From positions 103,788,001 through 103,852,000 of the forward strand of contig NC_043003.1 of assembly GCF_006345805.1 (NCBI RefSeq): DNA of 64,000 nt, read 5' to 3'. Made by a program: the position numbers and the translations under genes. The number at the start of each line of letters is the position of its first letter. The first letter of the stretch is position 1. The DNA comes from Octopus sinensis (taxonomy: Eukaryota). The notes below the pieces were generated by a model that was not told the origin of the DNA, did not search any database, and saw nothing but the letters and a program-made list of their open reading frames with translations. Of the stretch, positions 2,811 to 37,144 are shown piece after piece.

Positions 2811-2839
2811 TCAGAAATCACTACAGGTGTTTTTTTTTT
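2811..2839 (-). CDS. Probable terminal coding segment (EKKNTCSDF*)
   Basis: Long polypyrimidine acceptor ...tatctacctgctcacag; phase 1 gives a short basic tail and TGA at 2813-2811. Confidence 0.45.
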
Positions 2840-3040
2840 CTGTGAGCAGGTAGATACAGATAAAAGAGAAAATGAAAAAGCAAGCTCTTTGGTATCATTT
2901 GTAAAAAGCACCATCCGATTGTGGTTGATGCCAGCCTCCTCTGGCTTCTGTACTGGTGGCACATAAAAAAAGCACCCACTACACTCTCGGAGTGGTTGGC
3001 GTTAGGAAGGGCATCCAGCTGTAGAAACACTGCCAGATCA

Positions 3041-4541
3041 GATTGGTGCATGTAGAGACTGAGAAGAAGGTAATGGAGAGCATCCAGCAAATAGCTAACT
3101 CCATCCACCAAAGTATCAAGGTAACTATAGATTACCCCACTAAGAACCCTAACAATAGACTCCCTGTACTTCATACTGAACTTTGGTTAGAGACTGTGAA
3201 CAACAGAGTGCTCCTCTACTCCTATTATATGAAACCCGTAACTTCAAAATATGTTGTTCACAAGAACTCACCTTTCTCACACAACATGAAAAGTAACATA
3301 CTAATAGCAGACCTAGTTAGAATAATGAACGATGTGTCCCCACAATGCGAACCCTATGAAATGAAGAAACATATACAGAACTTCATACACTGCATGCAGT
3401 TCTCTGGATATGATCAGAAAGATAGGGTTCGTGTATACCGGGGGGCTAGAAACAAATTAGATAACATTATACGTAATGATACCAGTTGTACCTGCCCTAG
3501 ATATAGAAACAAAGAATGGAATAGAATACAAAGAACTTGTGACAAAGCAAACAGCGCGAACATGAGGTATAAAACCGACCAATATCAAGGAGTGATGTTT
3601 GTAGAGGTCACAGCCCATGGAGAACTAGCCTGTAGATTTAGAAAAGCTCTGAAGGAGACCAAACTTAACATTAAGATTATTGAAAAGCCAGGGAACTCCA
3701 TCAGATCACAAGTATGTAGGATGTACCCCTTTAAGAATACCGTATGCACCAATGATAACTGCATGGTATGTAGGATTAGCCCTGGTATTAACTGTAGAAC
3801 ACGAAATGTAGATAGGTATATAGTCTATATACCTATCCGTCTGTATACTGATCTGTTTATTTACATATCTATATGCTTACATAGAGAAAAAAGTGCATAC
3901 TCACACGCTCACACCCACATACATACCTTTATCTACCTAACAGTCCACTACCTAATCTACCTAACAGTCCACTAACTAGTTAGTGGACTGTTAGGTAGAT
4001 AAATGTATGTATGTGGGTGTGAGTATGCACTTTTTATTTCTCTATGTAAGCATATAGATATGTAAATAAAGAGATCAATATACAGACAGATAGGTATATA
4101 GACTATATGAACAGACACATATGGAGACACGGATCCACACATATAAAGATGCACATCCATGCATACAAACATGGTACATAGTTACATAACACACACACAC
4201 ATACATCGAAAATACACAAACACGGACAGGCAAGCACATAAATATACAGGATACGTACATACAGATGCACACACACACATATATACATACATACACATGC
4301 AAAAACACACACACATACATACGTACATGCATGAATGTATAGGCACACACACACACACACACGCGTACAAACTAACAAAATGCAGTGTAAATAACGGACA
4401 GAGTCAGAACTATCGAAAAGGTTGCAAGGCGCAATGAAAAGTTTAGGAAATTAAAAATAAGGAAAAAAAGTGGAAATTTTACCGGTGAGTGTGTTAAATA
4501 ATAAGGCACAAAAAGAAAATGACTCTCCCCAGACACAACAG
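3041..4541 (+). mobile_element. Second copy of the same Penelope-like family, GIY-YIG region replaced by simple repeats
   Basis: 310-aa ORF 3043-3975 collinear with copy 1. Shares the 3' end gactctccccagacacaa followed by (TA)n. Confidence 0.85.
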
Positions 4542-4617
4542 TATATATATATATATATATAGTTCAGGTAAAACTGTAACTAATGATGTGATGTAATAGG
4601 TGCTCAAATTGACTTAC

Positions 4618-4685
4618 CAGTTAAAACACTAACTTCAACTGCGATGAAGACAAAAAGTGCTGTTGTAGCTACTAGCAATGAATGG
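4618..4685 (-). CDS. Probable transmembrane-helix exon (HSLLVATTALFVFIAVEVSVLT)
   Basis: Strong donor ACTG|GTAAGT. Acceptor cacttatag is weak. 68 nt, phase 2 to 1, fits both neighbours; about 20 mostly hydrophobic residues. Confidence 0.5.
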
Positions 4686-4840
4686 CTATAAGTGGCTTAT
4701 CATTGAGCAGGTACATAAGCAGTAAAAAGGCATACCTTAATCTGCATACCTTATTTCTTATGGTACACTCTAACAAAACAACTTAGCAATTACGTTTAAA
4801 TATATAAATTCCATGCTTTTTCTGTATGTATATATAAAAG

Positions 4841-5168
4841 GGTCAACAGTAAAGATCCCCTTTGGCGATGAATGACCATGGGATTGCACTTAGTTCCCTG
4901 CCGAGGCACAAGTCCGGGCAGGTTGTTTATGGAAGACCAGCAGTCGCTCATGCATACCAGCCTCCCTTCTCCATGCCATTGATGTTATCCAAGGGAAAGG
5001 CAAAGGGGCCAATACAGCTTGGCACCAGTGACATTGCAATTCATTTCTACACTTGAGTGAACTGGAGCAATGTGAGGAGATAAAGTGTCTTGCTCAAGAA
5101 AACAACCCACAGCCTGGTCCGGGAGTTGAACTAACTACTTCATGATTTTGAGTCTAATGGTCTAAGCG
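4841..5168 (-). mobile_element. SINE family D (tRNA head + ttgagcaagacacttta core); second copy 40665-40930
   Basis: Two homologous copies in the window. Confidence 0.65.
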
Positions 5169-5169
5169 C

Positions 5170-5418
5170 CCTCACATGTGTGTGTATATGTGTGTCACCG
5201 TGTCTTGACATCTTATGATAGTTGTAAAAGAATGACATTCATTTCCACTGGAAAAACATTCAGCAAAAATATGTCTGTCTTTGGGGAAATATTACCTTGC
5301 TTGGAAGCAGCTGAGGGTTGGCAACAGGAAGGGCATCCAACAGTAGAAGATCTGCCTCAACAAATTTTGTCTGACCCCTGTAAGCATGGAAAAGGGGACT
5401 TTAAACGATGATGATGAA
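5170..5418 (+). mobile_element. SINE fragment ending in an RTE-type tail (aggaagggcatcc..aaacgatgatgatg)
   Basis: 3' end resembles the RTE LINE tail seen at 44130-44305. Confidence 0.55.
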
Positions 5419-5692
5419 GAATGATGAACATAAATACATGCAAATATATTTGTAGTTTTTGAGAATATTTTTATTTTGTATTTTTAAGAATATTTTTTCT
5501 ATTTTTTCTCTTTTCTTGATTAAAATTTTATAAATCTTATATTTTCGCAAACAAAATAAATTTTGATGGAAAAAATAATAAAGAAAAGAAAATAGTGGTG
5601 ACAAATTTCAAAGTTTATCAGATATTCTGGAAAAGAACACAAAAATTATGTTCTCTACTCTCTCTCTCTCCTGCTAAAGTCATTTTACTGAC

Positions 5693-5930
5693 ATTTGAAG
5701 TTCTTTGCCATTTGTCATGGCATTCAAAGCAGAGTCACAAAGCGAGACTTTCTTGCTGTACTGTTTTAGCTTATCCTGAAGCTGTGCCTCCTGTTGCGTT
5801 AGTTCTGTGTTCCGTTGTTCTAGAAGAGTATAGTCTGCTTGTACCTGACTGACTTCGGAAAGTAACTCTTCTAGTCGGTCTTTTTTCCTCTGTTGCTTCT
5901 GCCGCACTTCTTGCAATAAACTAGACACAG
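5693..5930 (-). CDS. Coiled-coil exon (VSSLLQEVRQKQQRKKDRLEELLSEVSQVQADYTLLEQRNTELTQQEAQLQDKLKQYSKKVSLCDSALNAMTNGKELQ)
   Basis: Heptad-like Leu/Gln/Glu/Lys pattern. Acceptor gtcttacttttttag, donor AAT|GTCAGT; 238 nt, phase 1 to 2. Read-through gives a stop at 5680. Confidence 0.8.
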
Positions 5931-5961
5931 CTAAAAAAGTAAGACAAATATTACATTAGTA

Positions 5962-6002
<41 letters not shown>

Positions 6003-6294
6003 TTTATATTTTGGCACAAGGCCAGCAATTTCAGGGGAAGGGATAAGTTGATTGCAGTGACCCCAGTGTTCGACCAGGACTTATTTTACCAACCCCAATA
6101 GGATGAAAGACAAAGTCAACCCTGGTGGCATTTGAACTAAGAACATAAAGACAGATGAAATGTTGCTGAGCATTTGGCCCAGCTTGTTAATGATCCTGCT
6201 ACCTTAAGAACAACACAAGAGCAGCAGCAGCAGCAGCAGGGAGGCGCAATGGCCCAGTGGTTAGGGCATGCTGTATGTTTCATACAATTTCATG

Positions 6295-6845
6295 GACCAG
6301 AAATACTGAATGGATCCTTATGATATTTGGAACTTAGATTCAATGCATAAGGACAGGGAATAATGTAGTATGTTTGGTTTGAATTTGAGGTGGCTTAAAG
6401 GGGGCAGAACCCCCCCATGAAAATTCATAAATTTCCAATGTTGATGAAATTTCAACCATAGGTAATTGACACATCAAGAAGTATTCCCAAAGTTTCCACT
6501 TTTCATGAGGATTTTAAGACCCCTGATGGGGTCTTAACTACCAAATTTTAGTCATTTTTTTATGATCCAAAACTAGGTCAAAAGTACTGAATGGATCTTT
6601 ATGAAATTTGGAAATTATATTCTATGCATAAGGAGAGATGTAATGCAGTATATGTTTGAAAGTGAAGGGGAACAAATGAGGTCACAACCCCCATGAAAAT
6701 TCATATATTCTTGCTGTTCATGAGATTTTAACCATAGATATTAGACACAAATGAAGTAATATCCCCCAAATTTTAACTTCTTAGGAGTCAGTAAGAACCC
6801 TTAATGGTGGCTTAACCCCCACAATTTAGTCATTTTTATTCCTAA
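6295..6845. repeat. Diverged tandem duplication of a unit of about 280 bp; related sequence 7570-7830
   Basis: tactgaatggatc..atg..atttggaa..tgcataagg..ccccatgaaaattcat occurs twice. Confidence 0.6.
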
Positions 6846-8535
6846 GCCAAGATGAATACAATTGCAGTCGTTAAAACTGTAGGGTCACCCAAGCATAAAA
6901 GATGAGCGTTATTTGTAATTCAATGGTACAACAGTGTAAGAGTTTGCTTTGAGATATACTTAGATTGTGATTTCTGCAATGTGGTGCAGAAATTGTCAAG
7001 TAAAGGAGATACATCTTTGCCTCCACTGATTCAGTTGCGAAGTGTTATTTTGAGTAAAGTTATTTGTTGCACACCTCTTTTGAGTCTTTTTATTATCACT
7101 GGGTCAGAGATAACCTCCAGATGGTAACATTGATTTCAAGGCCTTTCCAGATAAGTGATTGGTCATTCAAAGAGATTTATAGATTGCAAATTTATTCTGT
7201 TCAGTTACCTATTGGCATAGTGATCATTGGCAAACTCCAGACGTGACACTTTCATTTCCCCTTAGCCCTCATGTCACACAGTTGTTAATGTTTATTTGAG
7301 CTGGGTCATGTCCTTCCAATTGCTACAGATCCGTAATGCATTTTATGGTTGTGCCGGTCACCTATATGGCGAGGAATCCTACATTGGGGAATGGTAACGA
7401 CTAGGGTAGGGTAACTGACTGCTTATTGTGATCATTTGTCTTTTGGTTTCCTGTAGCTTTACTCTCTTTTACAAACCCAGTGAACATTCATATATTTCCG
7501 ATTTCAAAGAAATTTGAACAATAGACATAAGACACAAGTTAAAAAAGATTCTCAACAATTAAACTTCTCTGGTTGACTTTAAGACCCCATCACTAATAGA
7601 GGTCTTAACTCCCACATTTTAGAGCTCCATGTGCTCCATTTTTCAGGAGCAATAACCTTTGAATAAGTTCCATAAGATTTGAATTTTGGAATCTGGGCAT
7701 AAAGATGAGTAGTATGGGATAAATGTGTCATCATTAGAATTTTCGTTAGGGTGTGTAAAGAGGGAAAGAACCTTCATTAAAATTCTTAATATCCAATTTT
7801 GATGAAATTTGAATGATAGGTATTCCAGTTCATTAGAGAGAATATAAAAGAAAAGTCTAATTCTTCAGTTCCATGTGACACAGGCAATGCTGGGTATCTC
7901 TGCGAGTTTAATTCTAAAAATATGATGGGATTTTTCCTAAACTTCAAATGGCTATGAGGGGTCTAGTAAAGCAGGAATCAAAGGGATCCATTGGTAAGCA
8001 TGGTTGAGAAACACTGATGTAAGGAAGGACATCCAACTCTGGAAGCAATTCCAAAGCTGACAGTCCTCTGGGTTTGCCAGCATGGAAGTTAGATCTTACA
8101 AATGATGATGATCATCATCATGAAGACCACTAATCTAATATTCCTTCCATCACATGCATACTCACAGCTTGCATGCACACACCACTACTCATACCACCTA
8201 TATATACACACATGCCTGCACACACACACACTCCACTCAGCTTCTCGAGTGAACTCTCCTTACTGCTACCAGGCACACTACTATCTACCTGTCATGTCTA
8301 CAGACATGCCTGCACATGAGCCTGCACGGACACACTATGTCAAACACATACATGCAAACACTGTTAATCTCACCAGTCAAGCACTCTCTCACATACAAAC
8401 ACACTGTCCATACATCCTATACAAACATATATAAATACATATACATGGACACACAAATATATATACATATATATAATAAAAATGAGGGTAATAAATTAAA
8501 ATAATTTATTACCAGCCGTTAAATAAATATATAAT

Positions 8536-8588
<53 letters not shown>

Positions 8589-8813
8589 ATATATATAAAT
8601 GTACATTCAGTTCTAATATACTCTAATATCTCACGTGCTTAATATGTATATGCTATCAAAATATATTTATGTTTCATTTCATAATGATAAAGCATTTTGC
8701 TGACAATTTCCTTTATCAATACCTACTGCTGCCTGCTCTAATTATTTACTGATAACATATATATATATAACATATACACACATATACATAATATATAAAA
8801 CAGTTACCCTTAC

Positions 8814-8954
8814 ATTTTAGCTCACTACTCATGCTGTCCAGAGCCAATGCATGTTGATCTCTGTCGTTTCGCATTACATCAAGGAAGGTCTGTCGCGTAC
8901 TGTTATCACAGATTTTGAAGTATTCAGCAATAGAATCAATTTCACCATCAGTAG
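8814..8954 (-). CDS. Internal exon (TDGEIDSIAEYFKICDNSTRQTFLDVMRNDRDQHALALDSMSSELK)
   Basis: Acceptor ctttatatttacag, donor AAT|GTAAGG; 141 nt, phase 1 to 1, open frame. Confidence 0.8.
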
Positions 8955-9281
8955 CTGTAAATATAAAGGGTTATGTCATTAATCCTTCCCCCAACTTAAA
9001 AAGCGCAAAAGACCACCCCCACCTCCTTCCAGTTGGATACCTTTTATTTATATAACTATTTGTGAAACTTTAAAAAAAATGTGTAAATGTAAATGCCTCT
9101 TCCATCCTCTCATCCATTCTGCCCATTTTGATACTTTGCTCCCTATCAAAGCCACAAACAAAGCTTTGGTCAGACTGAGGCTACAGTAGAAGACACTTGC
9201 TCAAGATGCCATGCAGTGGGACTGAACCTAGAATCATGTGGTTGGGAAGCAGACTTCTTACCACACAGCCACACCTGTGTT

Positions 9282-9322
<41 letters not shown>

Positions 9323-10185
9323 GTATATATGTGTGTAAAGTGATAGAAAGGCTATAATGAAATTGCCACAAGACATGGAATATCCAGCCATTCAGGCAGT
9401 GCCAGTTTCTCAAGCATTGCAGACTGTTCTGGCCACATCAATTTCACTGTGTTTTTTCTGTCACCTTTTCCAAATAATACAGGTCTTGAATACAGGACAA
9501 CCTCCAACCTCCTTGGACTCTCTCTCTCTCTCTCTTTCTAAATATATATACAGATATATTATTATTATGGTGGTGGTGGTGGTGATGATGATGATTATAT
9601 GCCCTCATGCAATACCAGGCACTGGCTCTCATGGTTTCTGACCTTAACTGATTGTATTATCATATACATGTTTTGTCATGGCATAACAGATGGCTTACAG
9701 CAAATATTCTGCTCAGTATCACAGATTTGCTTGTCAGTTGCTTGATCTTGTCCCTTGGTGGCTGACGATATGTGCATCTCTAATCATGAGCAGAAGTAAT
9801 GGGGGAGCATCATATCCATATGTTGAGACAAATTCCTTGGGGTTTGACTAATACCCCTCAGGAAACATGGGTGTTTCATTCAACATCCTTAAACAACCCT
9901 TATTCAGGGACTTTTTGAGTGGAATAAGCTACTTAACCTGAAGAAAATTCTAACTGGGCCCCACCTGCAAAGTCATGTTCTGTTAATCTTGATATGAGAT
10001 CACCATGTTGCGTACATATGGTTGTGATGTAATGCACCTGGTTATATCCTTATCAGACGGGTAGTCATGATGGATATATTGGACTTCCTATATTTGTACC
10101 CCAGTGTCACTTTGATGTCATGTGCTGCTCTTCTACTCCTCCTCCTCAACAATAATAACAGCAACAACAACAGCAGCAGCAGCAG

Positions 10186-10556
10186 TGGAGGCACAATGGC
10201 CCAGTGGTTAGGGCAGTGGACTCGCGGTCGGAGGATCATGGTTTCGATTCCCAGACCGGGCGTTGTCTGTGTGTTTATTGAGCGAAAACACCTAAAGCTC
10301 CACGAGGCTCCGGTAGGGGGGGGGGCAACCCCTATTGTACTCTTTTGCTCCATCTTTCTCTCACTCTTTCTTCCTATTTCTTGTCCCCGACTTCCTACGC
10401 AACCACCGAGCCTGGATGCGTATTCATCCATCCGTCGATGCTCTCGGTGTCGGGGGTTAACCTGCTTTCTCTTCTGCGGGTCTTACGAATAGCAAAGGAC
10501 CACGTTTCGGACTTCTCCGATCTTGCGAGCTCTGGGACGAAGACCGTTCGCTCAAC
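10186..10556 (+). mobile_element. tRNA-derived SINE family C, inserted in (CAG/CAA)n
   Basis: ggaggcacaatggcccagtggttagggcagtggactcgcgg..ggtttcgattccc head. Truncated head also at 6240-6268. Confidence 0.8.
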
Positions 10557-10774
10557 AGCAACAGCAGTAACAACAATCCTTTCTATTATAGGTACAAGGC
10601 TTGATATTTGGGGGTAGGGGACTAGTTGATTACTTGACCTCAATGTTTCAGTAGTACTTGATTTATTGACCTTGAAAGGCAAAGTCGACCTCAGCAGAAT
10701 TTGAACAAAATATTGCTAAGCATTTCACCTGGCATGCTAACAATTCTGCCAGCTCACAGCCTTATTATTGAAAA

Positions 10775-11512
10775 ATGGGAAGAGAGCTTTATTATAGCAG
10801 TTTAAGATGAAGTGTTAAAAACAAACACCTTGAGAAAACATGTGTTTGGGGAGACAGTGTCAGCAAAATATAGAATGTGTGGCATTTGGGGTGGAGCAAT
10901 GGCACAAGTTGTAGCCGAGTGTCCCAAGTTGGCTCATGAAGAATATAAGAAATGGAAGCAGAACCAGGTTGTGGAAGTGTTGCACTGGAAACTGAGTCTG
11001 AAACGGGGATTTGAAGCCGAAAGAACTTGGGATGATAAACGGGTTGAAAGAGTGCATGAGATAAATACTCAATTCCATGGAATTTTCTTATTCAAACAGA
11101 CAAGAAGTCAGATAATAATAAACCTAAATATAACAATAATAGACAAAGAAAAGCAAAGTTGCATACTAATTCATCCATCATGTCCATTTGATTCCAGGAT
11201 TGTAAAGGTAGATGAAAAACTTAAAATTTGAAATTGTGAGAATTTGGAATATGAATCCAGTAAATGTTGGCGCATTAGGAACTGTAAGTAATGCTGTAGA
11301 GAAATGGCTGAGTGAGAATGAAATGGAATGCCCTCTTGAACTTCTACAGAAAGTTTGTTTCTTAGGAACAGGAAAGATTATCAGAAGGATTTGAACACTC
11401 GAAAGATTATTGAAAGCTTGTGGATATCCAAAGTTACAAGTAGTAACCTGCTACACACATAAATTCTACCAGGAATAAGACAAAACCTGAGTCAAATTGA
11501 ATAATAATAATT
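10775..11512 (+). mobile_element. R4/Dong-like non-LTR retrotransposon 3' fragment (zinc knuckle + restriction-like endonuclease)
   Basis: YRMCG...VVAECPKLAHEEY, NKP(D)ITIIDK, VGALGTVS, LLQKVCFLGTGKIIRR; frameshifted; ends in a (TAA)n run. Confidence 0.75.
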
Positions 11513-12192: not shown

Positions 12193-12305
12193 ATTTGGTG
12201 ATGCTGTTCGTTTTTATAGAGTTGCTGGAACTGTGGGAAATTGTGTTGGAGATTTCTAGGTCTGGCAGAAGATTGGCGTGAATGTTTTTCTCATTGTCAC
12301 CATTC
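12193..12305 (-). CDS. Internal exon (NGDNEKNIHANLLPDLEISNTISHSSSNSIKTNSITK)
   Basis: Acceptor ctctcttgacattccag, donor AAT|GTAAGC; 113 nt, phase 2 to 1. The other two frames hit stops. Confidence 0.75.
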
Positions 12306-12399
12306 CTGGAATGTCAAGAGAGAGGCAAATAGCAAAGATTTACATTCACACACAGACATATAATACATAAAAGGAAGGTCAAGGTTCTATGGGCAGACC

Positions 12400-14480: not shown

Positions 14481-14528
<48 letters not shown>

Positions 14529-14673: not shown

Positions 14674-14689
14674 TTATGAACATACTGGA

Positions 14690-14947: not shown

Positions 14948-15052
14948 CTGGTGTGGCAATTTTCATTATTTACTGCAAACTGTGAAGGGTGCAGGAGTTC
15001 AATCTGGGCAGCAATGATATCTTTTGATTCTATCATATCACAATCATCTATA
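14948..15052 (-). CDS. Internal exon (IDDCDMIESKDIIAAQIELLHPSQFAVNNENCHT)
   Basis: Acceptor ttgtcttcccag, donor CAG|GTAAGA; 105 nt, phase 2 to 2, open frame. Confidence 0.75.
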
Positions 15053-16713: not shown

Positions 16714-16796
<83 letters not shown>

Positions 16797-16829: not shown

Positions 16830-16882
16830 CTTATCACACCACTGTCCTGTGTTCGATCTGTTTCTCCAAGTTCTTCTCCGGG
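16830..16882 (-). CDS. Internal exon (PGEELGETDRTQDSGVI)
   Basis: Acceptor ttttgttttgtctgcag, donor AG|GTAATT; 53 nt, phase 0 to 2, fits both neighbours. Confidence 0.7.
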
Positions 16883-19046: not shown

Positions 19047-19459
19047 CTTTTGATGGAACTGGTGAATGCTAGTTCTGTCTGAACTGTTCAATAGGTTTAT
19101 ATTTTCTGTTATCAAAGAATTCGATACACTAATTGAGGAATTTGGTAGAATGTAAATGTCTTTAGTCACATCTGCTGACTGTAATGGAGTTTTACCAAGG
19201 GTTGGTTTGGGTTGAATTGATGAATGAGGGTGTGGTGAGAGTTGCTGCCGTTGCTCATGGTCTTCTTCTTCTTGAGAAAGGTTGCGGAACTCCGTGGAGC
19301 TGACATTATTTATGTTCAGGTCATCCACGACAGTTGGAAGGCTTGTGTAAGGTGTCATGGAGTCAGGATTGAAATTATCCATTTGCTGGAAGTCTCCATC
19401 ATCATCCTCATTTGACACCGAGTTATATCTTGAGGACTGATTCTTCATTTCATCTGACA
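19047..19459 (-). CDS. Internal exon of the BED/coiled-coil gene; acidic, Ser/Asn-rich low-complexity segment (SDEMKNQSSRYNSVSNEDDDGDF...HQFHQK)
   Basis: 413-nt stop-free frame between polypyrimidine acceptor ttttttccag and donor AAG|GTAATG; phase 1 to 0. Confidence 0.75.
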
Positions 19460-27140: not shown

Positions 27141-29389
27141 ACCAACTCCATCAAAGGGACTGGATCAGACCAGCTTTCAACCTGTATCAAGATATTGGCA
27201 TTGTCTCCTCACTCTTGACTTAAAAAAAAAAGAGAGAAAAGTCTGGGGATTTAGCTCAGGGTATCAGTCTAAAAAGCAGGTAACATTTCTTGACAGTTAA
27301 ATGTACTGAGGTAATGTAGAATAAAATGTTCAGCATTGAGAAAATGATTGCAATAGATCTGAACTCAAGAAAGTAAAATGAGTCCAACCCATTCATTGCT
27401 AGTGTCACACTGAAGCATTGACAAGCTGAAATAAAAGTGCTGGTCTTCAGATCGCATTGATAATGTGTTGAGACTTTCTACAGTAAATACATTGCATTTC
27501 TAATCAAGAAACAGAACATTATCTCCAATTGACCGAATGAAATAAACATTCTAGCTTCTTTTGTGATTAGCAATAGGAAAGGTGGCATCCAGCAATAAAA
27601 AAGTTGGTTCAAATGAAACTCCAAACTTTACATCACTAAAATTACCAGGGAGAAATGTATATCAGATAGAAAAAAAAACAAAACAAGCAAGAACTCCACA
27701 TGTATAACTCCACATGTATAGATGATGAATTTAAGGCAGTGCGCAATGAATGAAGTATTATGCTAAAATACAACAAAATATCTCCACTGGGTTTGAACCC
27801 CCAATTCGCAAACTCTGATACATCAATCTATTGGGTTTATAATATTATTCTCTCAGAAATATAGACATAAAGAATATAGATATAAAACTATTAGCCTTAT
27901 TTAGTTGATTCTGTTTCAAAGAGATTTGGCCATACCCTCACTTCAAACAGAATATTACTGGATCAGCTAATAGAGTCTATAGAAAGTAGTCAAAGGGATT
28001 TTTGATGCCGCTCAGTCCCATGCTATTTTTGGAATCCACAAATGTGAAACCAGACAATTATAAATCCTGGCAAATATATATAATAATCAACATACCAAGG
28101 ACCTATGTTTCTCTTGGAAGCTGGCAAAAATATTCTACCCCTTAACTACTAATCCACTACAAAAATCAGAGGAGGCCCACAATGGAGAATTACTCCCACA
28201 TCTAGGATGGAGCTAAGCATACATAAATCCCAGACTCCACCCAAAGAAATGCCACTCAACTGATTGGCATGAAGTCTTTTGCCAATACATTCCAACTCCT
28301 GGTTCAGAAATGTGATGTCTCCTCTCTCTCTCTCTCACTCTGTCTAAAAGCTATTTCAGAAGCATCTGCCCCATGGAGATGGCTTATCACATATCACTTC
28401 CACTCAAGCTATTCTAACTCATTCATTATCTTCTCTTCTCCTTCTCACCCATATGCTACCCTTCCCCACACCCATCAGATACAATACCAATTAATACATT
28501 CAATTCTTCCATGTCAGAATTCTGGCCCTCTGGAATCCATTCTCCACATACGTCTGTCAGTCTGTCTGTCTGTATCTCTCTTTAGGACTGCATTGATTTT
28601 ACCCATCTTGCAGAACCAGAAGAGTATGGGCTTAACCCCCTTCCTCTAGACCAAAGGTTCTCAACCCATTTTGGCCAAAGGCCCCCTTTTGATCCTTGGA
28701 TGCCACAAATGGCATCCCTTAGAAAATATTTATATTTTTCAATATACTATTTATTTTGATATCAGCAGATAATGATTGAAAAAAAAAACGAAATAATGAA
28801 TTGAAAGTTTGGTAATTGTATTTATTTCCACCATGTGACACTTATGAGATCAAAGTATTGTCTATCGAAAGAATGCCAATGAAATCATTTCAAACCTTTC
28901 TGATTTTCCTTATCAAAACAGCTAGAACTTGTACAACAATCTGACATATAAGTTATTGACACCTGGGAAGAGGATTTTTATGTTCAAGAAAGAGAGTGTA
29001 TTTGATAGTAATTGTTGAAATACATATGTATTTCATATGAGTAGCAAATTGTGGAGGATGGTATTCACAGTACTTGGATCTAGTTAGTTTGAGTCACAAA
29101 ATCAGCTCACTTTTAAAATGACGTAAAAAATATGAAAATTTGTCATATTAAATATTCATTTCTTAATCAGGATCTGGTTTGTTTCCTTCACAAAATCTGC
29201 ATTTTTTAAAAGGAAGTAAAAAATCTGAAAACTGGTTATCTTGATGCAGTTTTCCATGCTTATTCCTGTGAAGCCATGAACTTCTGGAGAAAAATTTGGT
29301 TTTAAAATACGGACAGTCCATATTTTAGTGTCCAATGAAGGAAAGGTAAGCATAAGTGGGCTGGTTACACCCCTGGCATAGGCCACAAG

Positions 29390-29732
29390 GTTATGGTCTC
29401 ACTTGGATTGCCGGGTCTTCTCAAGCACAGTATATTTCCAAAAGTCTCGGTCACTAGTCATTGCCTTGGTGAGGCCTAATGTTTGAAGGTCATGCTTCAC
29501 CACTTCATCGCAGGTCTTCCTGGGTCTACCTCTTCCACAGGTTCCCTCAACCGCTAGGGTGTGGCACTTTTTCACACAGCTATTCTCATCCATTCTCGCC
29601 ACATGACCATACCAGCGCAGTTGTCTCTCTTGCACATCACATGATGCTTCTTAGGTCCAACTTTTCTCTCAAAGTACTTACACTCTGTCAAGTATGCACA
29701 CTGACATTACACATCCATCGGATCATACTGGC
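29390..29732 (-). mobile_element. RTE LINE fragment, same family as 43190
   Basis: QERQLRWYGHVARMDENSCVKKCHTLAVEGTCGRGRPRKT. Confidence 0.8.
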
Positions 29733-31988
29733 TTCATATATATATATATATATATATACAAGTAAATGCCCACCCTGTCCATTGGGCAGTTTGTATAGGT
29801 GAAGAGAGTTAACTTGGATGGTGTTAAGTTGTGGAGATGTTTGGTGATCATATGGGGTTGTTACTATTGGTTAGGGTGAATGCAATCTTTTGATGAAAGA
29901 AGCATTTGTTATCTTACTTATTTGGTAGTGCTCTGTGAACTTGTCAAACGGACTACTAAAAGTTAAGGGTGTTTCAATGACATAACTCAAGCAATTTAGA
30001 AGCAGTAAAATTATTGTTTAGAAGTGACTGAATTGTGATTAAAAAAAAACAAACTTATCTAATAATGTTGATCTGTTCAGCTTGTTTACTGAAAGAATAC
30101 TGAACATTGGTCGATTAATTTTATGCAGCTGTAAAATCTTATGGAGAATGTATTACAAAGAATCTGACAATTCTGCCTGTTATGCAGTTTGAATGAGAGC
30201 CCCAAAATTTTATGCGTTTTAATAGCAATCAGTTTTTTCTCTTTTTTGCTTAATTAAAATGGTTGCCTTTTCCTCGTAGTTTTTCATGCCAGCTGTAAAA
30301 GTGAAGAAGGTTAACTAGTATGGTGTTAAAGTAGTGGAGATGTTTGGTGATTGTATGTGGTGGTTACTTTTGACTGTTTCTTCTCAATAAGGATAATTGA
30401 TTGATAACGAATCTTAACACAATATATATAGTGGAATCGACGTAGTGGTAAGGACAACGGGATACGTAACAGTAGTTTTTAATAAAAATAAAAATAGAAG
30501 TTTTAATCATCTGATGGAAAGGCAAACATTACAAAAATAGTGATTCTCACTTTGAAACTGACAATTTAAAAAATCTTTTTAGATTATGGAATGCCTAGCT
30601 CTCTCATGTATCCATGTTTAAAATTTCAGCACGATTGGATGAATAACACTCAAGTTATAAGCGCACAAACAGACAGACAGAATGGGATTTATATATTATA
30701 TATATATATGTATATATGCATACACACATACATTTCGTAGACTACGACTTCAGAAAAAGTATTTTTAGGATAAAATACACACAATATAAATGTTAACATA
30801 TTAATTCATATAGTACCAACTAGTAAGTATATATTTAATAACGAACCATGTAATCCACACTCTTGAAAATGTATTCCTGTAAAATGTTGGGGTGGGGGTG
30901 AAATTTCTGTGGGTTCCACCCCCACCTCAACCCCTGTTTTCTGGACAAAACAAGTGATTTTGTAGCATATTAAGAGGCTACCGTAATTCATTGAATGTAA
31001 AAATAAAAAGAAACAAGCATTTTCCAATGATTCCGGGAAGGGGAATGGTGAAATTTTCGAGGACCCTCCCACCCATTTTCCGTATTAAAAAAAGTGCTTT
31101 GAGGTATATTAGGAGGTCACCACAATTCCTTCAATGCCCCCCAAAACAAATTTCTAACGATTCCGGGATGGTGGGGGACTGCCCCCCCCTTTTTACTGAA
31201 CAAAAATAAGGGGTTTGCAGCACATTAGGGGGTCAGGGTACTTGATTCAATGCAAAAAATCCGAGGTTTTTCTTTTTCCTTAGTGAAATACATGCAGGTG
31301 TACTTCCCAAAATTTACCATTATTTTCTATGTAAGCCCTTCGAAGTTACTTTAACAACTTTATCATTCAAATTTAAATAAATGTTATTAAAAAACTTAAA
31401 TATTTAAAAAAAAAAAAAAGAAAACTGAAAATAAAATACTAACAGGTTATTAAACAAATTATTTTGTAAGTGACTTTATCAAATTTGTTCCGCTTACTCT
31501 GGAAACCTAAATCAATTTTCATATTTTCCCGAGTTTTAGTTTAGTTAATTATCCTGCCGATGTATGTCCCTAAAACCAAAGTTCACCATTAATTGACGCT
31601 ACTTTAGTTAAAGATTACGATCCAATGCATTATGTCCATATGATGTGAGGATGTGTGTGGCATGACGGAGATTTAGTGCTTATTTGAGACAGGTTGAACA
31701 ACCACTTGTGTATGTAGAAGGTGGGTGGCTTAGAAAGATGCAGGCTTGCAGAATATTGTGTACATTAAATCATCATCATCATCGTTTAACGTCCATTTTC
31801 CGCACTAGCACGAGTTGGACGGTTTGACCGGGGTCTGGGAAGCCAGGGGCTGCACCAGGCTCCAGTCTGATCTGGCAGTGTTTCTACAGCTGGATGCCCT
31901 TCCTAATGCCAACCACTCCTCGAGTGTAGTGGGTGCTTTTTATGTGCCAGGGTAGTCTGGCAGCGGCCACGATTGGTTGGTGCTTTTA

Positions 31989-32400
31989 ACGTGCCACCGG
32001 CACGGAAGCCAGTCAAGGCGGTGCTGGCATCGGCCATATTCGGATGGTGCTTTTTACGTGCCACCGGCACAGAAGCCAGTTGAGGCGACGCTGGCATCGG
32101 CCACGTTCGGATGGTGCTTTTTACGTGCCACCGGCACGGAAGCCAGTCAAGGCGGTGCTGGCATCGGCCATATTCGGATGGTGCTTTTTACGTGCCACCG
32201 GCACAGGAGCCAGTTGAGGCGACGCTGGCATCGGCCACGTTCGGATGGTGCTTTTTACGTGCCACCGGCACAGAAGCCAGTTGAGGCGGCACTGGCATCG
32301 GCCATGTTCGTATGGTGCTTTTTACGTGCCACCGGCACAGAAGCCAGTTGAGGCGGCACTGGCATCGGCCACGTTCAGATGGTGCTTTTTACGTGCCACC
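31989..32400. repeat. 67-bp tandem array, 6 units, within an RTE 3'UTR copy
   Basis: acgtgccacc recurs at 31989, 32056, 32123, 32190, 32257, 32324, 32391. Confidence 0.9.
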
Positions 32401-32688
32401 GGAACAGGTATCACAACTACTATTTCCATTGATATTTATTTCGAGATACGTTGGTTAATATATAGTTTAAGACCTGGTCACGAAAACTATATTAACCTTC
32501 ACTCTCGCTGCGTGGCACCTATACTATAACCTCAGGTCCACCAAAACCTTGAAAGTAGATTTGGTAAACGGAAACTGAAAGAACACTGTGTGTGTGTATG
32601 TATATATATACATATATATAAAAGAATTTTTTGCGTAATGAGATAAAATCCAAGGCTGTGTAGATATTAGAGCATTTATAGATAGAAT

Positions 32689-32739
32689 GTCTTACAGCTG
32701 TTTCCAGGATATTTATTAATTATATCCTTCATCGGAGAC
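32689..32739 (-). ncRNA. Hammerhead-like fold (variant core)
   Basis: GUCU / CCGAUGA / AGGAUAU..AUAUCCU / G-GAAA-CAGCUG-UA / AGAC. U4C change and one extra G. Confidence 0.5.
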
Positions 32740-33261
32740 GGTGTGGTGTGTGTGTTTCTCCCCTATCACTGCTTGACAACCGGTGTTGGTATGTTTACAC
32801 CCCTGCAACTTAGTGGTTCAGCAAAAGGAACCGATTGAATAAGCAGTAGGCTTAAAAAATAAGTCTTGGAGTCGATTTGTTCAACTAAAACTTTTCAAGG
32901 CGGTCATCATCATCATTGTTCGACCGTGGTCAAGACAATGGAATTTACCATGCTATGCCAGACTTCACGGTCCATCATAGCATTACGGAGGTCCTGTTGC
33001 TGGATGCCTGTATCCCTGGAGATTACATCAGGTTAGGAGAGTATACACCCTCTGGTATTGCGAGTAGATGGCTTCCAGAGGAGAAGAGGAGAGGTGCTCC
33101 AGCATGGTCGCAGTCAAATGACAAAAATATATATATATATATATCATTTGTAGAAATACATAAATCTGGAGGAGAAGCAGCACACTCTAAGATGTAGAGC
33201 AATTGCTGGCCAACCATGTCTGGCAATTATGAGACGAAGAGATTCCATGCTTGATTGCATT

Positions 33262-33563
33262 TGTTTGTTCCTTCTCAAGCCATGCCTGGCTCATAAGGGC
33301 TGGTTTCCCGGTTTCTTTGGTGTATAGGTTCCCCACCTGGATGGGACGCCGGTCCATCACAGGTGAGCTGCAAGATGCAGGAGGAAAGAGTGAGAGAAAG
33401 TTGTGGTGAAAGAGTCAGCAGAGGTTTGCCATTACCTTCTGCCGGAGCTGTGTGGAGCTTAGGTGTTTCGCTCATAAACACACACATCGCCCGGTCTGAG
33501 ATTCGAACCTGCGATCCCTCGACCGCGAGTCCACTGCTCTAACTACTAGGCCATGTGCCTCCA
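33262..33563 (-). mobile_element. tRNA-derived SINE with the family-C head but a different 3' half
   Basis: ggaggcacatggcctagtagttagagcagtggactcgcggtc..gaaacacctaagctccac, then gatggaccggcgtcccatccagg. Confidence 0.75.
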
Positions 33564-33565
33564 CC

Positions 33566-33975
33566 TTGATTTCATGGAAAATACTCGAGAACCCAGGCCC
33601 CTACATCAACAGGACAAAACAGTGCAAGTTATGCATTGCTGAATGCATGAGGATCCTTAAAGATTTGCTTGTGCCATGGGTCATCCTGAATTCCAGGATG
33701 GAGATTTTTGAACCATGTCTGCATTTTAGAAAATTCCGAAGGAAGACAATTGTTTTCTTCCGTGGTGCTTTGGTGACCACAAGATGGCAGCACGGTCGAT
33801 GATCGATGAACAAAGGCAAAGGGAGATAATTACCTGGAGTTTTATCCTTAAAAACGATGCGTTTCCCCCACCATATTTTAAAGAGGTCTCAGGCCAGCAG
33901 TGTTTGGGCCCTGTAAAGCTAAGCCCCTTATGAGCTAGAAACCTAGGGTAACCCCATAAACTGGCCTACCCCACT
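33566..33975 (+). mobile_element. Penelope-like element C-terminal fragment and 3' region
   Basis: ISWKILENPGPY...CKLCIAE..IL...ILNSRMEIFEPCLHFRKF resembles the PLE GIY-YIG C-terminal motif; ends at TA/TG repeats. Confidence 0.6.
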
Positions 33976-34410
33976 ATGATATATATGTGTGTGTGTGTAT
34001 TTCTCCCCTATCACTGCTTGACAACCAGTGTTGGTATGTTTACACCCCTGAAACTTAGCGGTTCAGCAAAAGAAACCGATTGAATAAGCACTAGGCTTAA
34101 AAAATAAGTCCTGGGGTCGATTTATTCGACTAAAACTTTTCAAGGCGGTGCTCCAGCATGGTTGCAGTCAAATGACTGGAACATGTAAAAGAATAAAAGA
34201 AAATATATATATATCTTGTCAATGCATCAGATATCCTAAAAAGAAGCACACTCTGAAGCATGGAGCAGTAATGCATTTATCGGTAGTTAAGTCTACGTCT
34301 GGTCACAGAGTAAGAAATGGTTTCACATCCACAAAGAGCTTAGCCCCCATGGATGGCTCCACAGACTCTAAAACTGAAGACCTGGAAGGCAGGAATCTGT
34401 GACGGATATA

Positions 34411-34990
34411 TACAATGTGTCCATAAAGTCATTATGGCATTTCAAAACTATTGATGTAACTTGAAACACTGCACATTTCAAACACATGTTGAATATGAAA
34501 CCAACCAATAAACTTTACTCACGTTTCTTCAGAACTTTGTGAACAGTGCTCTTCTTAGGGCCTACTTGCTTAGCGTAGACATGCACTGGTTTCTTTGAAT
34601 TCCGTAGGTAGACGTCCCTTATAGCCTCAATAGACTCGTCACTCATCGGTAGTCTGCTGGAAGGTTTTGCAACCAGCAAGCTGCCAGTTTCCTTAAACTG
34701 GCGATTCCAACGGCGAATGCTGTTTTGATGTGGTGGCTCATCATTAAACACGTGACTGTATTCATGACAAACACATGTCATGGATTCAAATTTCACAAGC
34801 CGAAGAACGCATTGAACTTTCCTTTACACTGTACACATCTTGACAGATGAATCGGCTTGACTTGCTGTCATTTGTACCCGCATTTTCTTCACTATCCGAC
34901 TGGAGTATCAATTAGGTGTATGTAGGGCAACAGATGGAAGCCACACTGAACTGCGCTAAACTGTACGCAAACTTTATTAGCTGGTCTCAT
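34411..34990 (-). mobile_element. Tc1/mariner fragment (transposase N-terminal HTH)
   Basis: PPHQNSIRRWNRQFKETGSL...STVHKVLKKR; TIR-like tacaatgtgtccataaagtc. Confidence 0.7.
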
Positions 34991-36892
34991 TTAATAGGTA
35001 TATGAAATGTGTAGTGTTGGAAGTTACATCAATAAATAATTTTAAAATCCCACCAATCAGAAGAGAGAAGGTAGTGCCCATGACCCGTTACAAGACCTCC
35101 GAGACAGGTGGGAATGAGGAAGGTATCCTCAAACCGGTACGTTACAACAGGATGGATTTTGCTAAAAACATCCAAGGTGTTAGGTGGTGGTGTTAAGCCG
35201 GGCGACACAGTATGTCTACCACCTTTGTAGACTATGATGGAGTTTGAAATCAGAACACAAACAACAAGAACAATTATCAGATAGACAGCCTATTTTTTAG
35301 TCGACCCCGAAAGGATGAAAGACAAAACTGACCTAATAGACATGAGTCCATAAATTTAAAAATAGAAAATCGATTATCCTTCCCCCTACACACATACCCA
35401 GTATTTGACTGGTACCTGGAAGGATGAAAGGTGCAGTCCATCACGGCGAAATTCGAAAAACGTAAGGAGCAGCACCTGAATTCCGCTCCAAACATTTTGC
35501 AGTGCCCTGCTCCAAACGTTAGTAAGGTTTCTGTGTATGAACATGCACAAGGCGAACAACGGTTGAAAAGAGAAAACTTTACAAGGGAAGCATGAAGAAG
35601 AAATGTCTTTCGGACATAAGGGGAGAGGGCATTATTTGATATTATCGATCCCAGTATTTGACCCCGAAAGGATAATAGGTAAAGTTGACCTCGGCGGAAT
35701 TTGAACTCAGCACGTAGAGCCGGAAGAAGTGCTGTTAAGCATTTTGTATGATACACCAACCATTCGGCCAATCTAACGCCTTTTACTTTCCATTACAGGC
35801 TCAAGATCTGAAATTCTGGTGGAAGGAATTAGTTGATTGCATCGATCCGACTGCGAAAGCCTTTAATAATAATAATCCTTTCGTATCTGGCATAAGGCCA
35901 GCAATTTTAAGGAAAGTGGATTAATCAGTTACATCGAGTCCAATGCTTGACTGATACTTTATTTCCTCGATTCCGGAGACATGAAAGGTAACAACAGCAG
36001 GGTTTGAACTCTGAAGGTAAGAGCCGGCAGAAACACCGCAAAGTATTCTGATTTTTGCCAATGTACTGCTATTTCTTCTGACACTTTACGTTCTGAGTTC
36101 GACTTTGCCTTTCATCTTTCGAGATCGATAAAATAAGTTCCAGTTGAGCTCCGGGGTCGATGTAATTGACTAACCCACCACCACCACCACCACCAAATTT
36201 CAGGCCCTGTATCTATGCTAGAAAAGATTATTATTATGACAGACCGTTGACAGAGTGTTGGCAGAATCCTTAGCGAGCTGGATGAAATGCTTAGCGGTAT
36301 TTCATCCGTTGCTACGTTCTGAGTTCAAATTCCGCCGAGATCGACTTTGCCTTTCATCCTCTCAGGGTCAATTAAATTAGGTACCAGAGAAACATTGGAG
36401 TCGATTACATCGACTAGCCTCTTCACCCCCAAAATTTCAGGCCTTGTGTCTATTGTAGAAAAGATTATGACAGAACGAGTAACAATTGGGCATTTTAAAT
36501 GTGGCAGTGTAAGGTAGTTGAAGGCATAATCCCAATTTTGGTATTACTAGATCTATCACACTAAATTGAAGGGGTTAGGACGATCTTTATAGAAGTTTCC
36601 TTGACGAAGAGACGTCTCAATGACTAGTTTGGTTCAGATGACCAGCAGAAGAATCGTTAAGGCTGCTGGTGATAATAATGATACCGATGCTGAATTGTTA
36701 ATCAAAACAGAAATAAGAGAGGATCACCTTTGTCGGAAGTGTTGTATAAATTCACAGACAAAACCATCAATGTAAAGTAATACTGCATGAATAGAGGGGA
36801 AGAAAATTATTATGAGTCCTAGGAAGTGAGGAAAGACCTATTTTCAAGTAGCAATAGACAGAAGGAAAACTTACTTTCACACCAAATCTTAC

Positions 36893-37031
36893 GGTGCCAT
36901 ACCCTTAGGTGACTCCTGAGGTTCGTGTTAGAGCGATGGTATCGAACATTCCTGCCACATATCTTACAAAAGGCATCCTGAGCACTGACAGCCGTGAAAT
37001 AATTCCAAACTATGCATGTTTTCCGTCGCAT
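36893..37031 (-). CDS. First coding exon of a BED zinc-finger / coiled-coil gene (MRRKTCIVWNYFTAVSAQDAFCKICGRNVRYHRSNTNLRSHLRVWH)
   Basis: BED-finger pattern: VWNYF, CxxC, TNLRSHLRVWH (H-x4-H). ATG in gaaaaATG context. Acceptor ttcattttcgtttcag ends at 37078. Donor C|GTAAGA after 46 codons + 1 nt (phase 1). Confidence 0.75.
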
Positions 37032-37144
37032 TTTTCACTGTTTACTCAAAATCGCAAAACAAAGAAAACTCGGAATGCTGAAACGAAAATGAAAGTATTC
37101 CGATATTTGTGTGTGCGTGTGTTTGTTTGTGTATCTCTCTCTCT

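What the first reader, a model, noticed from the sequence alone, without database searches (positions are those of the whole stretch)
2811..37077. Spliced gene joining a BED zinc finger to a coiled coil and probable C-terminal membrane anchor
Seen: nine exons with GT-AG sites whose phases chain exactly (1,0,2,2,1,1,2,1) into 1299 nt, about 432 aa. Established: BED fingers are DNA-binding modules of hAT transposases and domesticated ZBED proteins, usually with a transposase-derived body. Inference: here the finger is an isolated exon with no transposase domain, fused to a disordered linker, coiled coil and hydrophobic tail. That suggests a membrane-tethered or nuclear-envelope DNA-binding protein, possibly lineage-specific and built by exon capture from a hAT element. 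I do not recognise this architecture.
Basis: partly seen in the sequence, partly recalled or inferred. Interest (0 to 1): 0.8.

Follow-up and report, generated by a model that had tools for sequence, protein, structure and literature searches.

The report
Octopus BED-finger coiled-coil gene, no anchor
This is a real, already annotated but unstudied octopus gene that joins a transposon-type BED zinc finger to a disordered linker and a long coiled coil; the proposed membrane anchor comes from two extra exons that no evidence supports.

Summary
The window is Octopus sinensis chromosome DNA, 100% identical to GCA_006345805.1.

**What the gene is.** The finding overlaps the RefSeq gene LOC115214149 (XP_029639081.1, 410 aa, "uncharacterized"). 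That protein threads exactly onto seven minus-strand coding exons with phases 1,0,2,2,1,1 and 1233 nt.

- I rebuilt the nine-exon, 1299-nt chain exactly.
- Exons 2-6 and every acceptor are correct.
- The exon-1 donor is 18 nt too early: 36893, where the evidence gives 36875.
- The last two exons (the TM exon 4685-4618, and 2839-2811) hang on a weak GTCAGT donor 10 nt before the real stop.

**Against the membrane anchor.**
- Orthologues in Octopus bimaculoides, O. vulgaris, Argonauta and a cuttlefish all end in the coiled-coil exon. So do three squid- or cuttlefish-like (decapodiform) transcript contigs. None has a membrane tail.
- Such open, hydrophobic extensions are common by chance here.

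**What holds up.**
- The BED exon is truly spliced to the rest and is the best conserved exon.
- There is no transposase body.
- The C-terminus is a roughly 100-residue coiled coil.
- No relatives were found outside coleoid cephalopods.

**Most likely function.** An oligomeric nuclear DNA-binding factor born by capture of a transposase exon. This is inferred, not shown.

The parts
37032..37077 (-). Probable 5'UTR part of the first coding exon. It begins just after a TTTCGTTTCAG acceptor, which implies an upstream non-coding exon.
   Evidence: The acceptor-like motif and the following bases are conserved in the Argonauta locus (65% ungapped over 60 nt; the TTTTCGTTTCAGCATTCC block is identical). 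The acceptor has 15/18 pyrimidines. Its use as a splice site is inferred.
36875..37031 (-). Coding exon 1 (157 nt, phase 1 out). It holds the start ATG and the whole BED zinc finger (aa 1-52). The donor is AAA|GTAAGT.
   Evidence: Pfam zf-BED E=2.7e-9. Exact threading of XP_029639081.1. 46-47 of 52 residues are identical to decapodiform transcripts. dN/dS about 0.09 against Argonauta. C22, C25, H41 and H46 are invariant.
19047..19459 (-). Coding exon 2 (413 nt, phase 1 in, 0 out). It encodes the acidic, Ser/Asn/Gln-rich disordered linker.
   Evidence: Threading. The acceptor has 17/18 pyrimidines. Low pLDDT and no secondary structure. An exhaustive HMMER search finds only the Argonauta cluster.
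16830..16882 (-). Coding exon 3 (53 nt). It carries the invariant motif ...DRTxDSGxIS (a DSGxxS, degron-like motif).
   Evidence: Threading. Invariant columns R200, T201, D203, S204, G205, I207, S208. The degron reading is inference.
14948..15052 (-). Coding exon 4 (105 nt). It carries the conserved DDCDxxESKxxIAAQIE short helix.
   Evidence: Threading. Invariant columns. Predicted helix 218-226.
12193..12305 (-). Coding exon 5 (113 nt). A poorly conserved stretch of the linker.
   Evidence: Threading. Only 5-10 of 37 residues are shared with Argonauta and the decapodiforms.
8814..8954 (-). Coding exon 6 (141 nt). It holds the invariant block DSIAEYFKICDNxTRQTFLDVMRNDR and the start of the long helix.
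   Evidence: Threading. 42/47 residues identical to Argonauta, dN/dS about 0.08. Helices 288-295 and 298-407 at pLDDT above 90.
5680..5930 (-). Coding exon 7, the last one (251 nt including the TGA stop at 5682-5680). It encodes the coiled coil and the invariant KKVxLCDSALNA end.
   Evidence: Threading. One unbroken heptad register over about 14 heptads. All orthologues stop here.
34523..34646 (-). Alternative first coding exon (124 nt, phase 1 out, donor AAC|GTGAGT) inside intron 1. It derives from a transposon helix-turn-helix ORF.
   Evidence: The ORF 34823-34518 hits Pfam DUF4817 (HTH), E=2.3e-5. The O. bimaculoides model XP_052825556.1 starts with this exon spliced to exon 2. The sequence and donor are intact in the window. 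It is absent from the Argonauta locus. Whether O. sinensis uses it is not shown.
4618..4685 (-). By the evidence it is NOT part of the gene; it is most likely 3'UTR or intergenic DNA.
   Evidence: Weak acceptor, 9/18 pyrimidines. It needs the GTCAGT donor at 5693. There is no significant match in the Argonauta locus (best E=0.42). The only possible homologous stretch there lacks the donor and is not hydrophobic. No orthologue has such a tail.
2811..2839 (-). It is NOT supported.
   Evidence: It depends on exon 8. There is no conservation and no annotated gene downstream of the stop in the assembly record.

Best explanation
The locus is the Octopus sinensis gene LOC115214149, with seven coding exons spread over 31.35 kb on the minus strand.

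It encodes a 410-aa soluble protein in three parts:
1. An N-terminal BED zinc finger (aa 1-52), encoded entirely by exon 1.
2. A roughly 230-aa acidic (net charge -24), Ser/Asn-rich disordered linker. It holds a few invariant short motifs: IYI, DSGxIS and ESKxxIAAQIE.
3. An invariant helix (DSIAEYFKICDN.TRQTFLDVMRNDR) that runs into a coiled coil of about 100 residues and 14 heptads. The protein then stops in exon 7.

There is no membrane anchor.

**Most likely mechanism (inferred).** The coiled coil makes a parallel dimer or higher oligomer. This pairs two or more BED fingers so they bind clustered or paired DNA motifs with high avidity. The linker motifs recruit partners or control turnover. 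That would make it a cephalopod-specific nuclear DNA-binding regulator or architectural factor.

**Most likely origin (inferred).** The DNA-binding exon of a hAT-type transposase was captured by splicing into the phase-1 acceptor at 19459. This happened before octopuses and decapodiforms split.

**Shown versus inferred.**
- Shown: the gene structure, the domain content, the conservation and the absence of the anchor.
- Inferred: DNA binding, oligomeric state, nuclear role and the origin by capture.
For: **Identity and structure**
- The window is 100% identical to CM016865.1, and XP_029639081.1 threads exactly onto seven GT-AG exons.
- Argonauta has the same seven-exon structure. It also has the same head-to-head LIN7-like neighbour.

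**BED-to-exon-2 junction**
- It is present in the RefSeq O. sinensis model, in O. bimaculoides XP_014788653.1, in O. vulgaris CAI9726265.1 and in Argonauta.
- It is also present in three uninterrupted cDNA-like Logan contigs from three sequencing runs (L001, L004, L005).

**Constraint on the BED exon**
- It is the most conserved exon: 46-47/52 residues identical across coleoids, against 31-36/138 for exon 2.
- dN/dS is about 0.09, with synonymous sites near saturation.

**Domain content**
- zf-BED is the only Pfam family found in all five full-length members. There is no hAT dimerisation domain, no BESS domain and no transposase core.

**Coiled coil**
- A single helix spans 298-407 at pLDDT above 90.
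- It keeps one constant heptad register, with L/V/M at the a and d positions.

**End of the protein**
- Every orthologue ends at the same place.
- The cuttlefish-like transcript has a stop followed by at least 220 nt of UTR.

**Precedent**
- BEAF binds DNA through an N-terminal BED finger and gains affinity through C-terminal self-association (PMC3927085).
- Transposase DNA-binding exons are often captured by alternative splicing (bioRxiv 10.1101/2020.05.07.082677).
Against: - No experiment or expression data were available for Octopus itself. The O. sinensis and Argonauta proteins are computed gene models.
- The newer O. bimaculoides RefSeq model (XP_052825556.1) replaces the BED exon with a transposon-derived first exon. 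The BED-less isoform may therefore be common in Octopus.
- AlphaFold modelled the BED region poorly, with pLDDT 36-45 from a five-sequence alignment.
- The oligomeric state was not modelled.
- The origin of the finger in a hAT element could not be tested.
- The sequencing type and source species of the Logan contigs are inferred from their uninterrupted ORFs and from their similarity to the Acanthosepion protein.
Confidence: 0.65

Rival explanations
1. One reading: an alternative 3' splice (5693 to 4685, then 4618 to 2839) adds a C-terminal transmembrane segment. This would make a tail-anchored, nuclear-envelope or ER-tethered BED DNA-binding protein.
For: The chain is open and phase-compatible, and its tail has a strong hydrophobic stretch (KD19 2.42). 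The exon-8 donor CTG|GTAAGT is good. A torsin gene, whose product acts in the ER and nuclear-envelope lumen, lies nearby at 54018-54953. That link is only suggestive.
Against: - The donor is GTCAGT, with C at +3, unlike all six real donors. The acceptor has 9/18 pyrimidines.
- No orthologue or transcript contig carries such a tail. Decapodiform mRNAs stop and continue as UTR.
- The exon is not conserved in Argonauta. The one weakly alignable stretch there has lost the donor and the hydrophobicity.
- 117 of 319 downstream acceptors would also extend the frame, 4 of them with TM-like runs. About 6% of all open stretches in this AT-rich window are TM-like.
- No gene is annotated downstream of the stop.
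Confidence: 0.04
2. In Octopus the main product lacks the BED finger. Transcription would start at the transposon-derived exon (34646-34523) or elsewhere in intron 1. The protein would then act as a coiled-coil scaffold without a BED finger, with the BED form minor or restricted to certain tissues.
For: The current O. bimaculoides RefSeq protein XP_052825556.1 (399 aa) begins with this exon spliced to exon 2. The exon, its ATG and its GTGAGT phase-1 donor are intact in the window. Exon 2 has an in-frame Met in octopods.
Against: - The BED exon is 52/52 identical between the two Octopus species, and it is the most constrained exon across coleoids.
- The alternative exon differs at 7 of 41 residues between the two species.
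- The alternative exon is absent from Argonauta.
- The exon-2 Met is not conserved in decapodiforms.
- The O. sinensis and O. vulgaris models use the BED exon.
Confidence: 0.15
3. The protein is a transposon-control factor. Its BED finger would still recognise the ends of the hAT family it came from, and the dimer would repress or tether those elements rather than regulate host genes.
For: By analogy, captured transposase DNA-binding domains often keep binding their cognate transposon ends (KRABINER; abstract read). BED domains of the Hermes hAT transposase bind transposon-end DNA (PMC10368747, listed).
Against: The fusion is old, shared by octopods and decapodiforms, and its finger is nearly invariant, so the cognate elements should have decayed long ago. 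No BED-like or hAT copy lies in the window or in the Argonauta locus. No repressor domain was detected.
Confidence: 0.1

Closest known systems
Drosophila BEAF-32 (boundary element-associated factor)
   Same: An N-terminal BED finger binds DNA, a non-conserved middle region follows, and a C-terminal self-association region lets the oligomer bind clustered motifs (PMC3927085). There is no transposase core.
   Different: No BESS domain was detected in any member. There is no sequence similarity outside the finger. The C-terminus here is a single 100-residue coiled coil. The family is restricted to cephalopods, not insects.
Vertebrate ZBED proteins (ZBED1-6, domesticated hAT transposases)
   Same: The BED finger is of the same Pfam family. 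The closest solved relative is the ZBED1 BED domain (2ct5, E=0.067; its alignment runs through the ...H-x4-FCE helix). ZBED genes are host genes built from hAT DNA-binding parts (PMC3606216).
   Different: Most ZBEDs keep the transposase-derived body and the hAT dimerisation domain. This protein has neither. Its finger is a separate first exon in a seven-exon gene.
Host-transposase fusion genes made by transposase capture (e.g. KRABINER)
   Same: A transposase DNA-binding exon is spliced onto host exons through an existing acceptor (abstract). At this locus a second transposon HTH exon uses the same acceptor in O. bimaculoides.
   Different: Those cases were described in tetrapods and are mostly fused to KRAB. 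This one is in molluscs and is fused to a linker plus coiled coil with no known effector domain. Capture is inferred here, not shown.
THAP-type factors (THAP1, THAP11): zinc finger plus coiled coil
   Same: From my own knowledge, not tested here: an N-terminal transposase-derived zinc finger, a disordered linker and a C-terminal coiled coil that dimerises.
   Different: The zinc-finger fold and its transposon source differ (THAP from P elements; BED from hAT). There is no sequence relationship.
Tail-anchored coiled-coil membrane proteins
   Same: Only the coiled coil near the C-terminus is shared.
   Different: The supported protein has no hydrophobic C-terminal segment: maximum KD19 is 0.81, reached at residue 7.

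Membership tests
zf-BED (Pfam PF02892) | Profile match above the curated gathering score | tested here: met
   37.3 bits for the window exon and 33.7 bits for P0002, against a cut-off of 20.6. All 5 full-length members match.
zf-BED (Pfam PF02892) | Cys-x2-Cys ... His-x3-5-His zinc ligands conserved | tested here: met
   C22, C25, H41 and H46 are invariant in five orthologues.
zf-BED (Pfam PF02892) | Binds DNA | not testable with these tools
   This needs EMSA, SELEX or DAP-seq.
hAT transposase / classical ZBED with transposase body | RNase-H-like catalytic core and C-terminal hAT dimerisation domain (PF05699) | tested here: not met
   There are no such Pfam hits at E<=0.1 in any of five members or at E<=1 in P0001. 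The protein is only 410 aa, and most of it is disordered or coiled coil.
BEAF-32-like insulator proteins | C-terminal BESS domain (PF02944) | tested here: not met
   BESS does not appear among the Pfam hits.
BEAF-32-like insulator proteins | C-terminal self-association giving oligomers | tested here: inconclusive
   A long helix with an unbroken heptad register predicts a coiled coil. The oligomeric state was not modelled or measured.
Tail-anchored membrane protein | A single hydrophobic transmembrane segment at the extreme C-terminus of the real product | tested here: not met
   The annotated protein has a maximum KD19 of 0.81. All orthologues end in ...LCDSALNAMTN... and then stop. The TM exon is unsupported.
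Host-transposase fusion gene (transposase capture) | The transposase-derived domain is encoded by its own exon and spliced to non-transposon host exons | tested here: met
   The BED finger is exon 1 alone. It is joined to exon 2 in gene models and in transcript contigs.
Host-transposase fusion gene (transposase capture) | The domain is demonstrably derived from a transposon family (phylogeny or flanking element relics) | not tested

The most novel reading that the evidence does not exclude
This would be a coleoid-cephalopod-specific transcription or architectural factor, created when the BED exon of a hAT transposase was captured by the phase-1 acceptor of an older linker-plus-coiled-coil gene. 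The same acceptor would now be capturing a second, younger transposon DNA-binding (HTH) exon in the genus Octopus. That would give alternative isoforms with different transposon-derived DNA-binding heads on one oligomerising body.
Probability: 0.3. Interest if true: 0.55.

Novelty: new variant of a known kind. Interest (0 to 1): 0.3.

Why it matters
Cephalopods are known for lineage-specific gene regulation, yet few cephalopod-only DNA-binding proteins have been described.

This gene is a clean example outside vertebrates of a transposase DNA-binding exon fused to a host oligomerisation module. The finger has been kept almost unchanged across the octopus-squid split.

A possible second capture at the same acceptor in Octopus would let the capture mechanism be studied in progress.

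The more striking claim, a membrane-tethered BED protein, does not hold. As it stands, this is an uncharacterised but already annotated gene of moderate interest.

Tried and rejected
- **Word-index search with the exon-2 ORF:** nothing, because of the length limits.
- **Brute-force chaining of GT-AG open segments:** hundreds of candidates per phase class, so it does not discriminate.
- **Profile search with five full-length orthologues:** only the same four cephalopod clusters came back.
- **Profile against PDB sequences:** only marginal hits, to the ZBED1 BED domain and to the USF2 leucine zipper.
- **Pfam on every exon and on all members:** only zf-BED. The coiled-coil families (Nup54, CENP-H, ATG16, DUF4200) are all far below their cut-offs, so I rejected them as generic coiled-coil noise.
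- **AlphaFold2 with the five-sequence alignment:** only the C-terminal helix is confident. I did not run the fold search, because a single long helix gives meaningless matches.
no significant hit. One weak stretch downstream of the Argonauta stop aligns at the DNA level, but it lacks the donor and the hydrophobic character.
- **Literature search:** nothing for LOC115214149 or for BED plus coiled coil in cephalopods.
- **A link between the neighbouring torsin gene and a nuclear-envelope role:** considered, then rejected for lack of any anchor.

Full report
**Source of the window**

The window is AT-rich eukaryotic DNA full of TA/CA/GA microsatellites and SINE-like dispersed repeats. Positions 1-47031 are 100% identical, without gaps, to Octopus sinensis chromosome record CM016865.1 of assembly GCA_006345805.1.

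**Checking the observation**

- The first coding exon on the minus strand starts at ATG 37031. It encodes a bona fide BED zinc finger: Pfam PF02892, E=2.7e-9, 37.3 bits against a cut-off of 20.6.
- The acceptor at 19459 is very strong, with 17/18 pyrimidines before the AG.
It translates into 432 aa ending in a hydrophobic stretch plus EKKNTCSDF.
- So the chain exists as described.

**External evidence for the gene**

A word-index search with the exon-2 ORF found nothing within its length limits, and Pfam left exon 2 open. I therefore spent the one exhaustive HMMER job on exon 2. It returned a single cluster in 1.84 billion representatives: a 395-aa Argonauta hians protein named after Octopus sinensis LOC115214149.

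Searching with that protein, and then with a five-sequence profile, found only cephalopod proteins:

| Source | Accession or id | Length | Note |
|---|---|---|---|
| O. sinensis | XP_029639081.1 | 410 aa | "uncharacterized" |
| O. bimaculoides | XP_014788653.1 / A0A0L8FM32 | 410 aa | "BED-type domain-containing protein" |
| O. bimaculoides | XP_052825556.1 | 399 aa | alternative first exon |
| O. vulgaris | two models | 208 + 197 aa | gene split in two |
| Acanthosepion pharaonis | N-truncated model | 257 aa | |
| Logan-assembled contigs | P0003, P0011 | 396 and 410 aa | transcript-like |

**The supported gene model**

XP_029639081.1 threads exactly, residue for residue, onto seven minus-strand exons:

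- 37031-36875
- 19459-19047
- 16882-16830
- 15052-14948
- 12305-12193
- 8954-8814
- 5930-5680

The phases are 1,0,2,2,1,1 and the total is 1233 nt. All six donors are GTAAG or GTAAT, and all acceptors carry 12-17 pyrimidines out of 18. Argonauta has the same seven exons with shorter introns. It also has the same head-to-head LIN7-like (L27+PDZ) neighbour.

The six codons in between (RKIWCE) are kept in every orthologue, including the transcript contigs. They align with the C-terminal helix of the ZBED1 BED domain.

The evidence against this:

- The donor is unlike the six real ones, and the exon-8 acceptor has only 9/18 pyrimidines.
- All orthologues end in exon 7, after the invariant KKVxLCDSALNA motif.
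- A cuttlefish-like transcript contig shows TGA directly after ...TNER, followed by at least 220 nt of non-coding sequence.
- The tail peptide has no significant match in the Argonauta locus, best E=0.42.
- The one weakly alignable stretch downstream of the Argonauta stop has indels, no GT donor and charged residues in place of the hydrophobic run.
- No gene is annotated downstream of the stop.
- Chance alone supplies such extensions. Of 319 downstream AG sites, 117 open at least 20 codons in the needed frame, and 4 of those contain a TM-like stretch. About 6% of all open stretches in the window (113 of 1939) are TM-like.

The membrane anchor is therefore not supported.

**Is the BED exon really part of the mRNA?**

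Three short contigs (1240, 1529 and 1506 nt) from three different sequencing runs each carry one uninterrupted ORF. That ORF runs from the BED finger to the coiled-coil end. The octopod genes have six introns, so these contigs are most simply spliced transcripts of decapodiform orthologues. Their run type and species are inferred, not stated by the tool.

- The BED exon is the best conserved exon. It is 52/52 identical between the two Octopus species and 45/52 with Argonauta. It is 46-47/52 identical with the decapodiforms, against 31-36/138 for exon 2.
- Between Octopus and Argonauta it shows 16 synonymous and 9 non-synonymous differences, giving dN/dS about 0.09. Conservation drops to background just past the 36875 donor.
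- The in-frame Met in exon 2 is not conserved in decapodiforms.

**A complication worth noting**

The newer O. bimaculoides RefSeq protein begins with a different first exon. The window holds the equivalent: ATG 34646 to 34523, followed by GTGAGT in phase 1. It lies inside a transposon-derived helix-turn-helix ORF (DUF4817 hit, E=2.3e-5) in intron 1. This exon is missing from the Argonauta locus. It differs at 7 of 41 residues between the two Octopus species, while the BED exon is identical. It is therefore young and weakly constrained. It may be a real alternative isoform or an artefact of transposon-initiated transcription.

**What the protein looks like**

- Pfam finds only zf-BED in all five full-length members. 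There is no transposase core, no hAT dimerisation domain and no BESS domain.
- AlphaFold2 with the five-sequence alignment gives low confidence for residues 1-286. It gives one continuous helix from 298 to 407 at pLDDT 90-98.
- That helix keeps a single heptad register for about 14 heptads, with Leu/Val/Met at most a and d positions. Sub-threshold hits to a leucine zipper and to coiled-coil families agree with this.
- The linker (aa 53-285) is Ser/Asn/Asp-rich with net charge -24.
- The linker contains islands that are invariant across coleoids: IYI; DRTxDSGxIS, which fits the DSGxxS phosphodegron pattern (my own knowledge, untested); DDCDxxESKxxIAAQIE; and DSIAEYFKICDNxTRQTFLDVMRNDR.

**How it most likely works**

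- *Shown:* an isolated, strongly constrained BED finger, a disordered linker with conserved short motifs, and a long C-terminal coiled coil in a soluble protein.
- *Inferred:* the coiled coil oligomerises the protein so that two or more fingers bind paired or clustered DNA motifs. The linker motifs recruit partners or regulate stability.
- *Precedent:* this is the logic described for BEAF. Its N-terminal BED finger binds CGATA, and its C-terminal self-association gives high-affinity binding to motif clusters (PMC3927085).
- *Membership:* the protein fails the BESS test, so it works like BEAF but is not a member of that family. It is not a classical ZBED either, because the transposase body is absent. 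ZBED genes are domesticated hAT transposons (PMC3606216).

**Origin**

The second transposon exon using the same acceptor in Octopus makes it more attractive. I could not test it.

**Distribution and novelty**

No relative outside coleoid cephalopods appeared in three searches:

- the exhaustive search with exon 2;
- the word-index profile search of 5.8 billion clusters, limited to candidates of 225-717 aa;
- the profile search against PDB sequences.

The conserved C-terminal domain alone was not searched exhaustively, so "cephalopod-only" is provisional. No paper mentions the gene. It is already annotated, so what is new is the characterisation, not the gene. I rate it a new variant of a known kind: a domesticated BED-finger factor with a different oligomerisation module.

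**Verdict**

- Interest is 0.3.

Noticed in passing
window 54018-54953 (+): An intronless 311-aa ORF encodes a torsin-family AAA+ protein. Pfam Torsin scores E=5.9e-41, and the Torsin-1A C-terminal domain falls just below its cut-off. No gene with exactly this product is on record. It may be a single-exon gene or retrocopy lying beyond or inside the LIN7-like gene.
   Followed up: partly
window 34518-34823 (-), exon 34523-34646: A transposon-derived helix-turn-helix ORF (DUF4817) sits in intron 1. Its ATG and its GTGAGT phase-1 donor match the alternative first exon of O. bimaculoides XP_052825556.1. It is absent from Argonauta.
   Followed up: yes
window about 38956 to beyond 47031 (+): A LIN7-like gene (L27 + PDZ, 197-aa product) lies head-to-head with the BED gene, about 1.9 kb from its ATG. 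The arrangement is conserved in Argonauta, which suggests a shared bidirectional promoter region.
   Followed up: partly
window 1221-1637 (+); repeat 1201-1440 / 3572-3811: An ORF with a GIY-YIG nuclease domain (E=1.7e-6) overlaps a 240-nt direct repeat pair at 90% identity. This may be a remnant of a Penelope-like retroelement.
   Followed up: no
window 47249-47387 / 47392-47530: A near-perfect palindrome: 139-nt arms, 98% complementary, 4 nt apart.
   Followed up: no
window 42632-43138 and 31890-32425: Two tandem arrays: a 26-nt unit in about 14 or more copies, and a 67-nt unit in about 6-8 copies. The second gives long spurious ORFs on the minus strand.
   Followed up: no
window 37032-37091 (-) and L003 9941-10000: An acceptor-like TTTTCGTTTCAG|CATTCC block lies 46 nt upstream of the start codon and is conserved between Octopus and Argonauta. 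It implies an unmapped upstream non-coding exon.
   Followed up: partly
protein names in the databases: O. bimaculoides and O. vulgaris orthologues are named "probable serine/threonine-protein kinase DDB_G0278845". No kinase domain is present, so the name is probably a low-complexity artefact. The O. vulgaris annotation also splits the gene into two models.
   Followed up: yes
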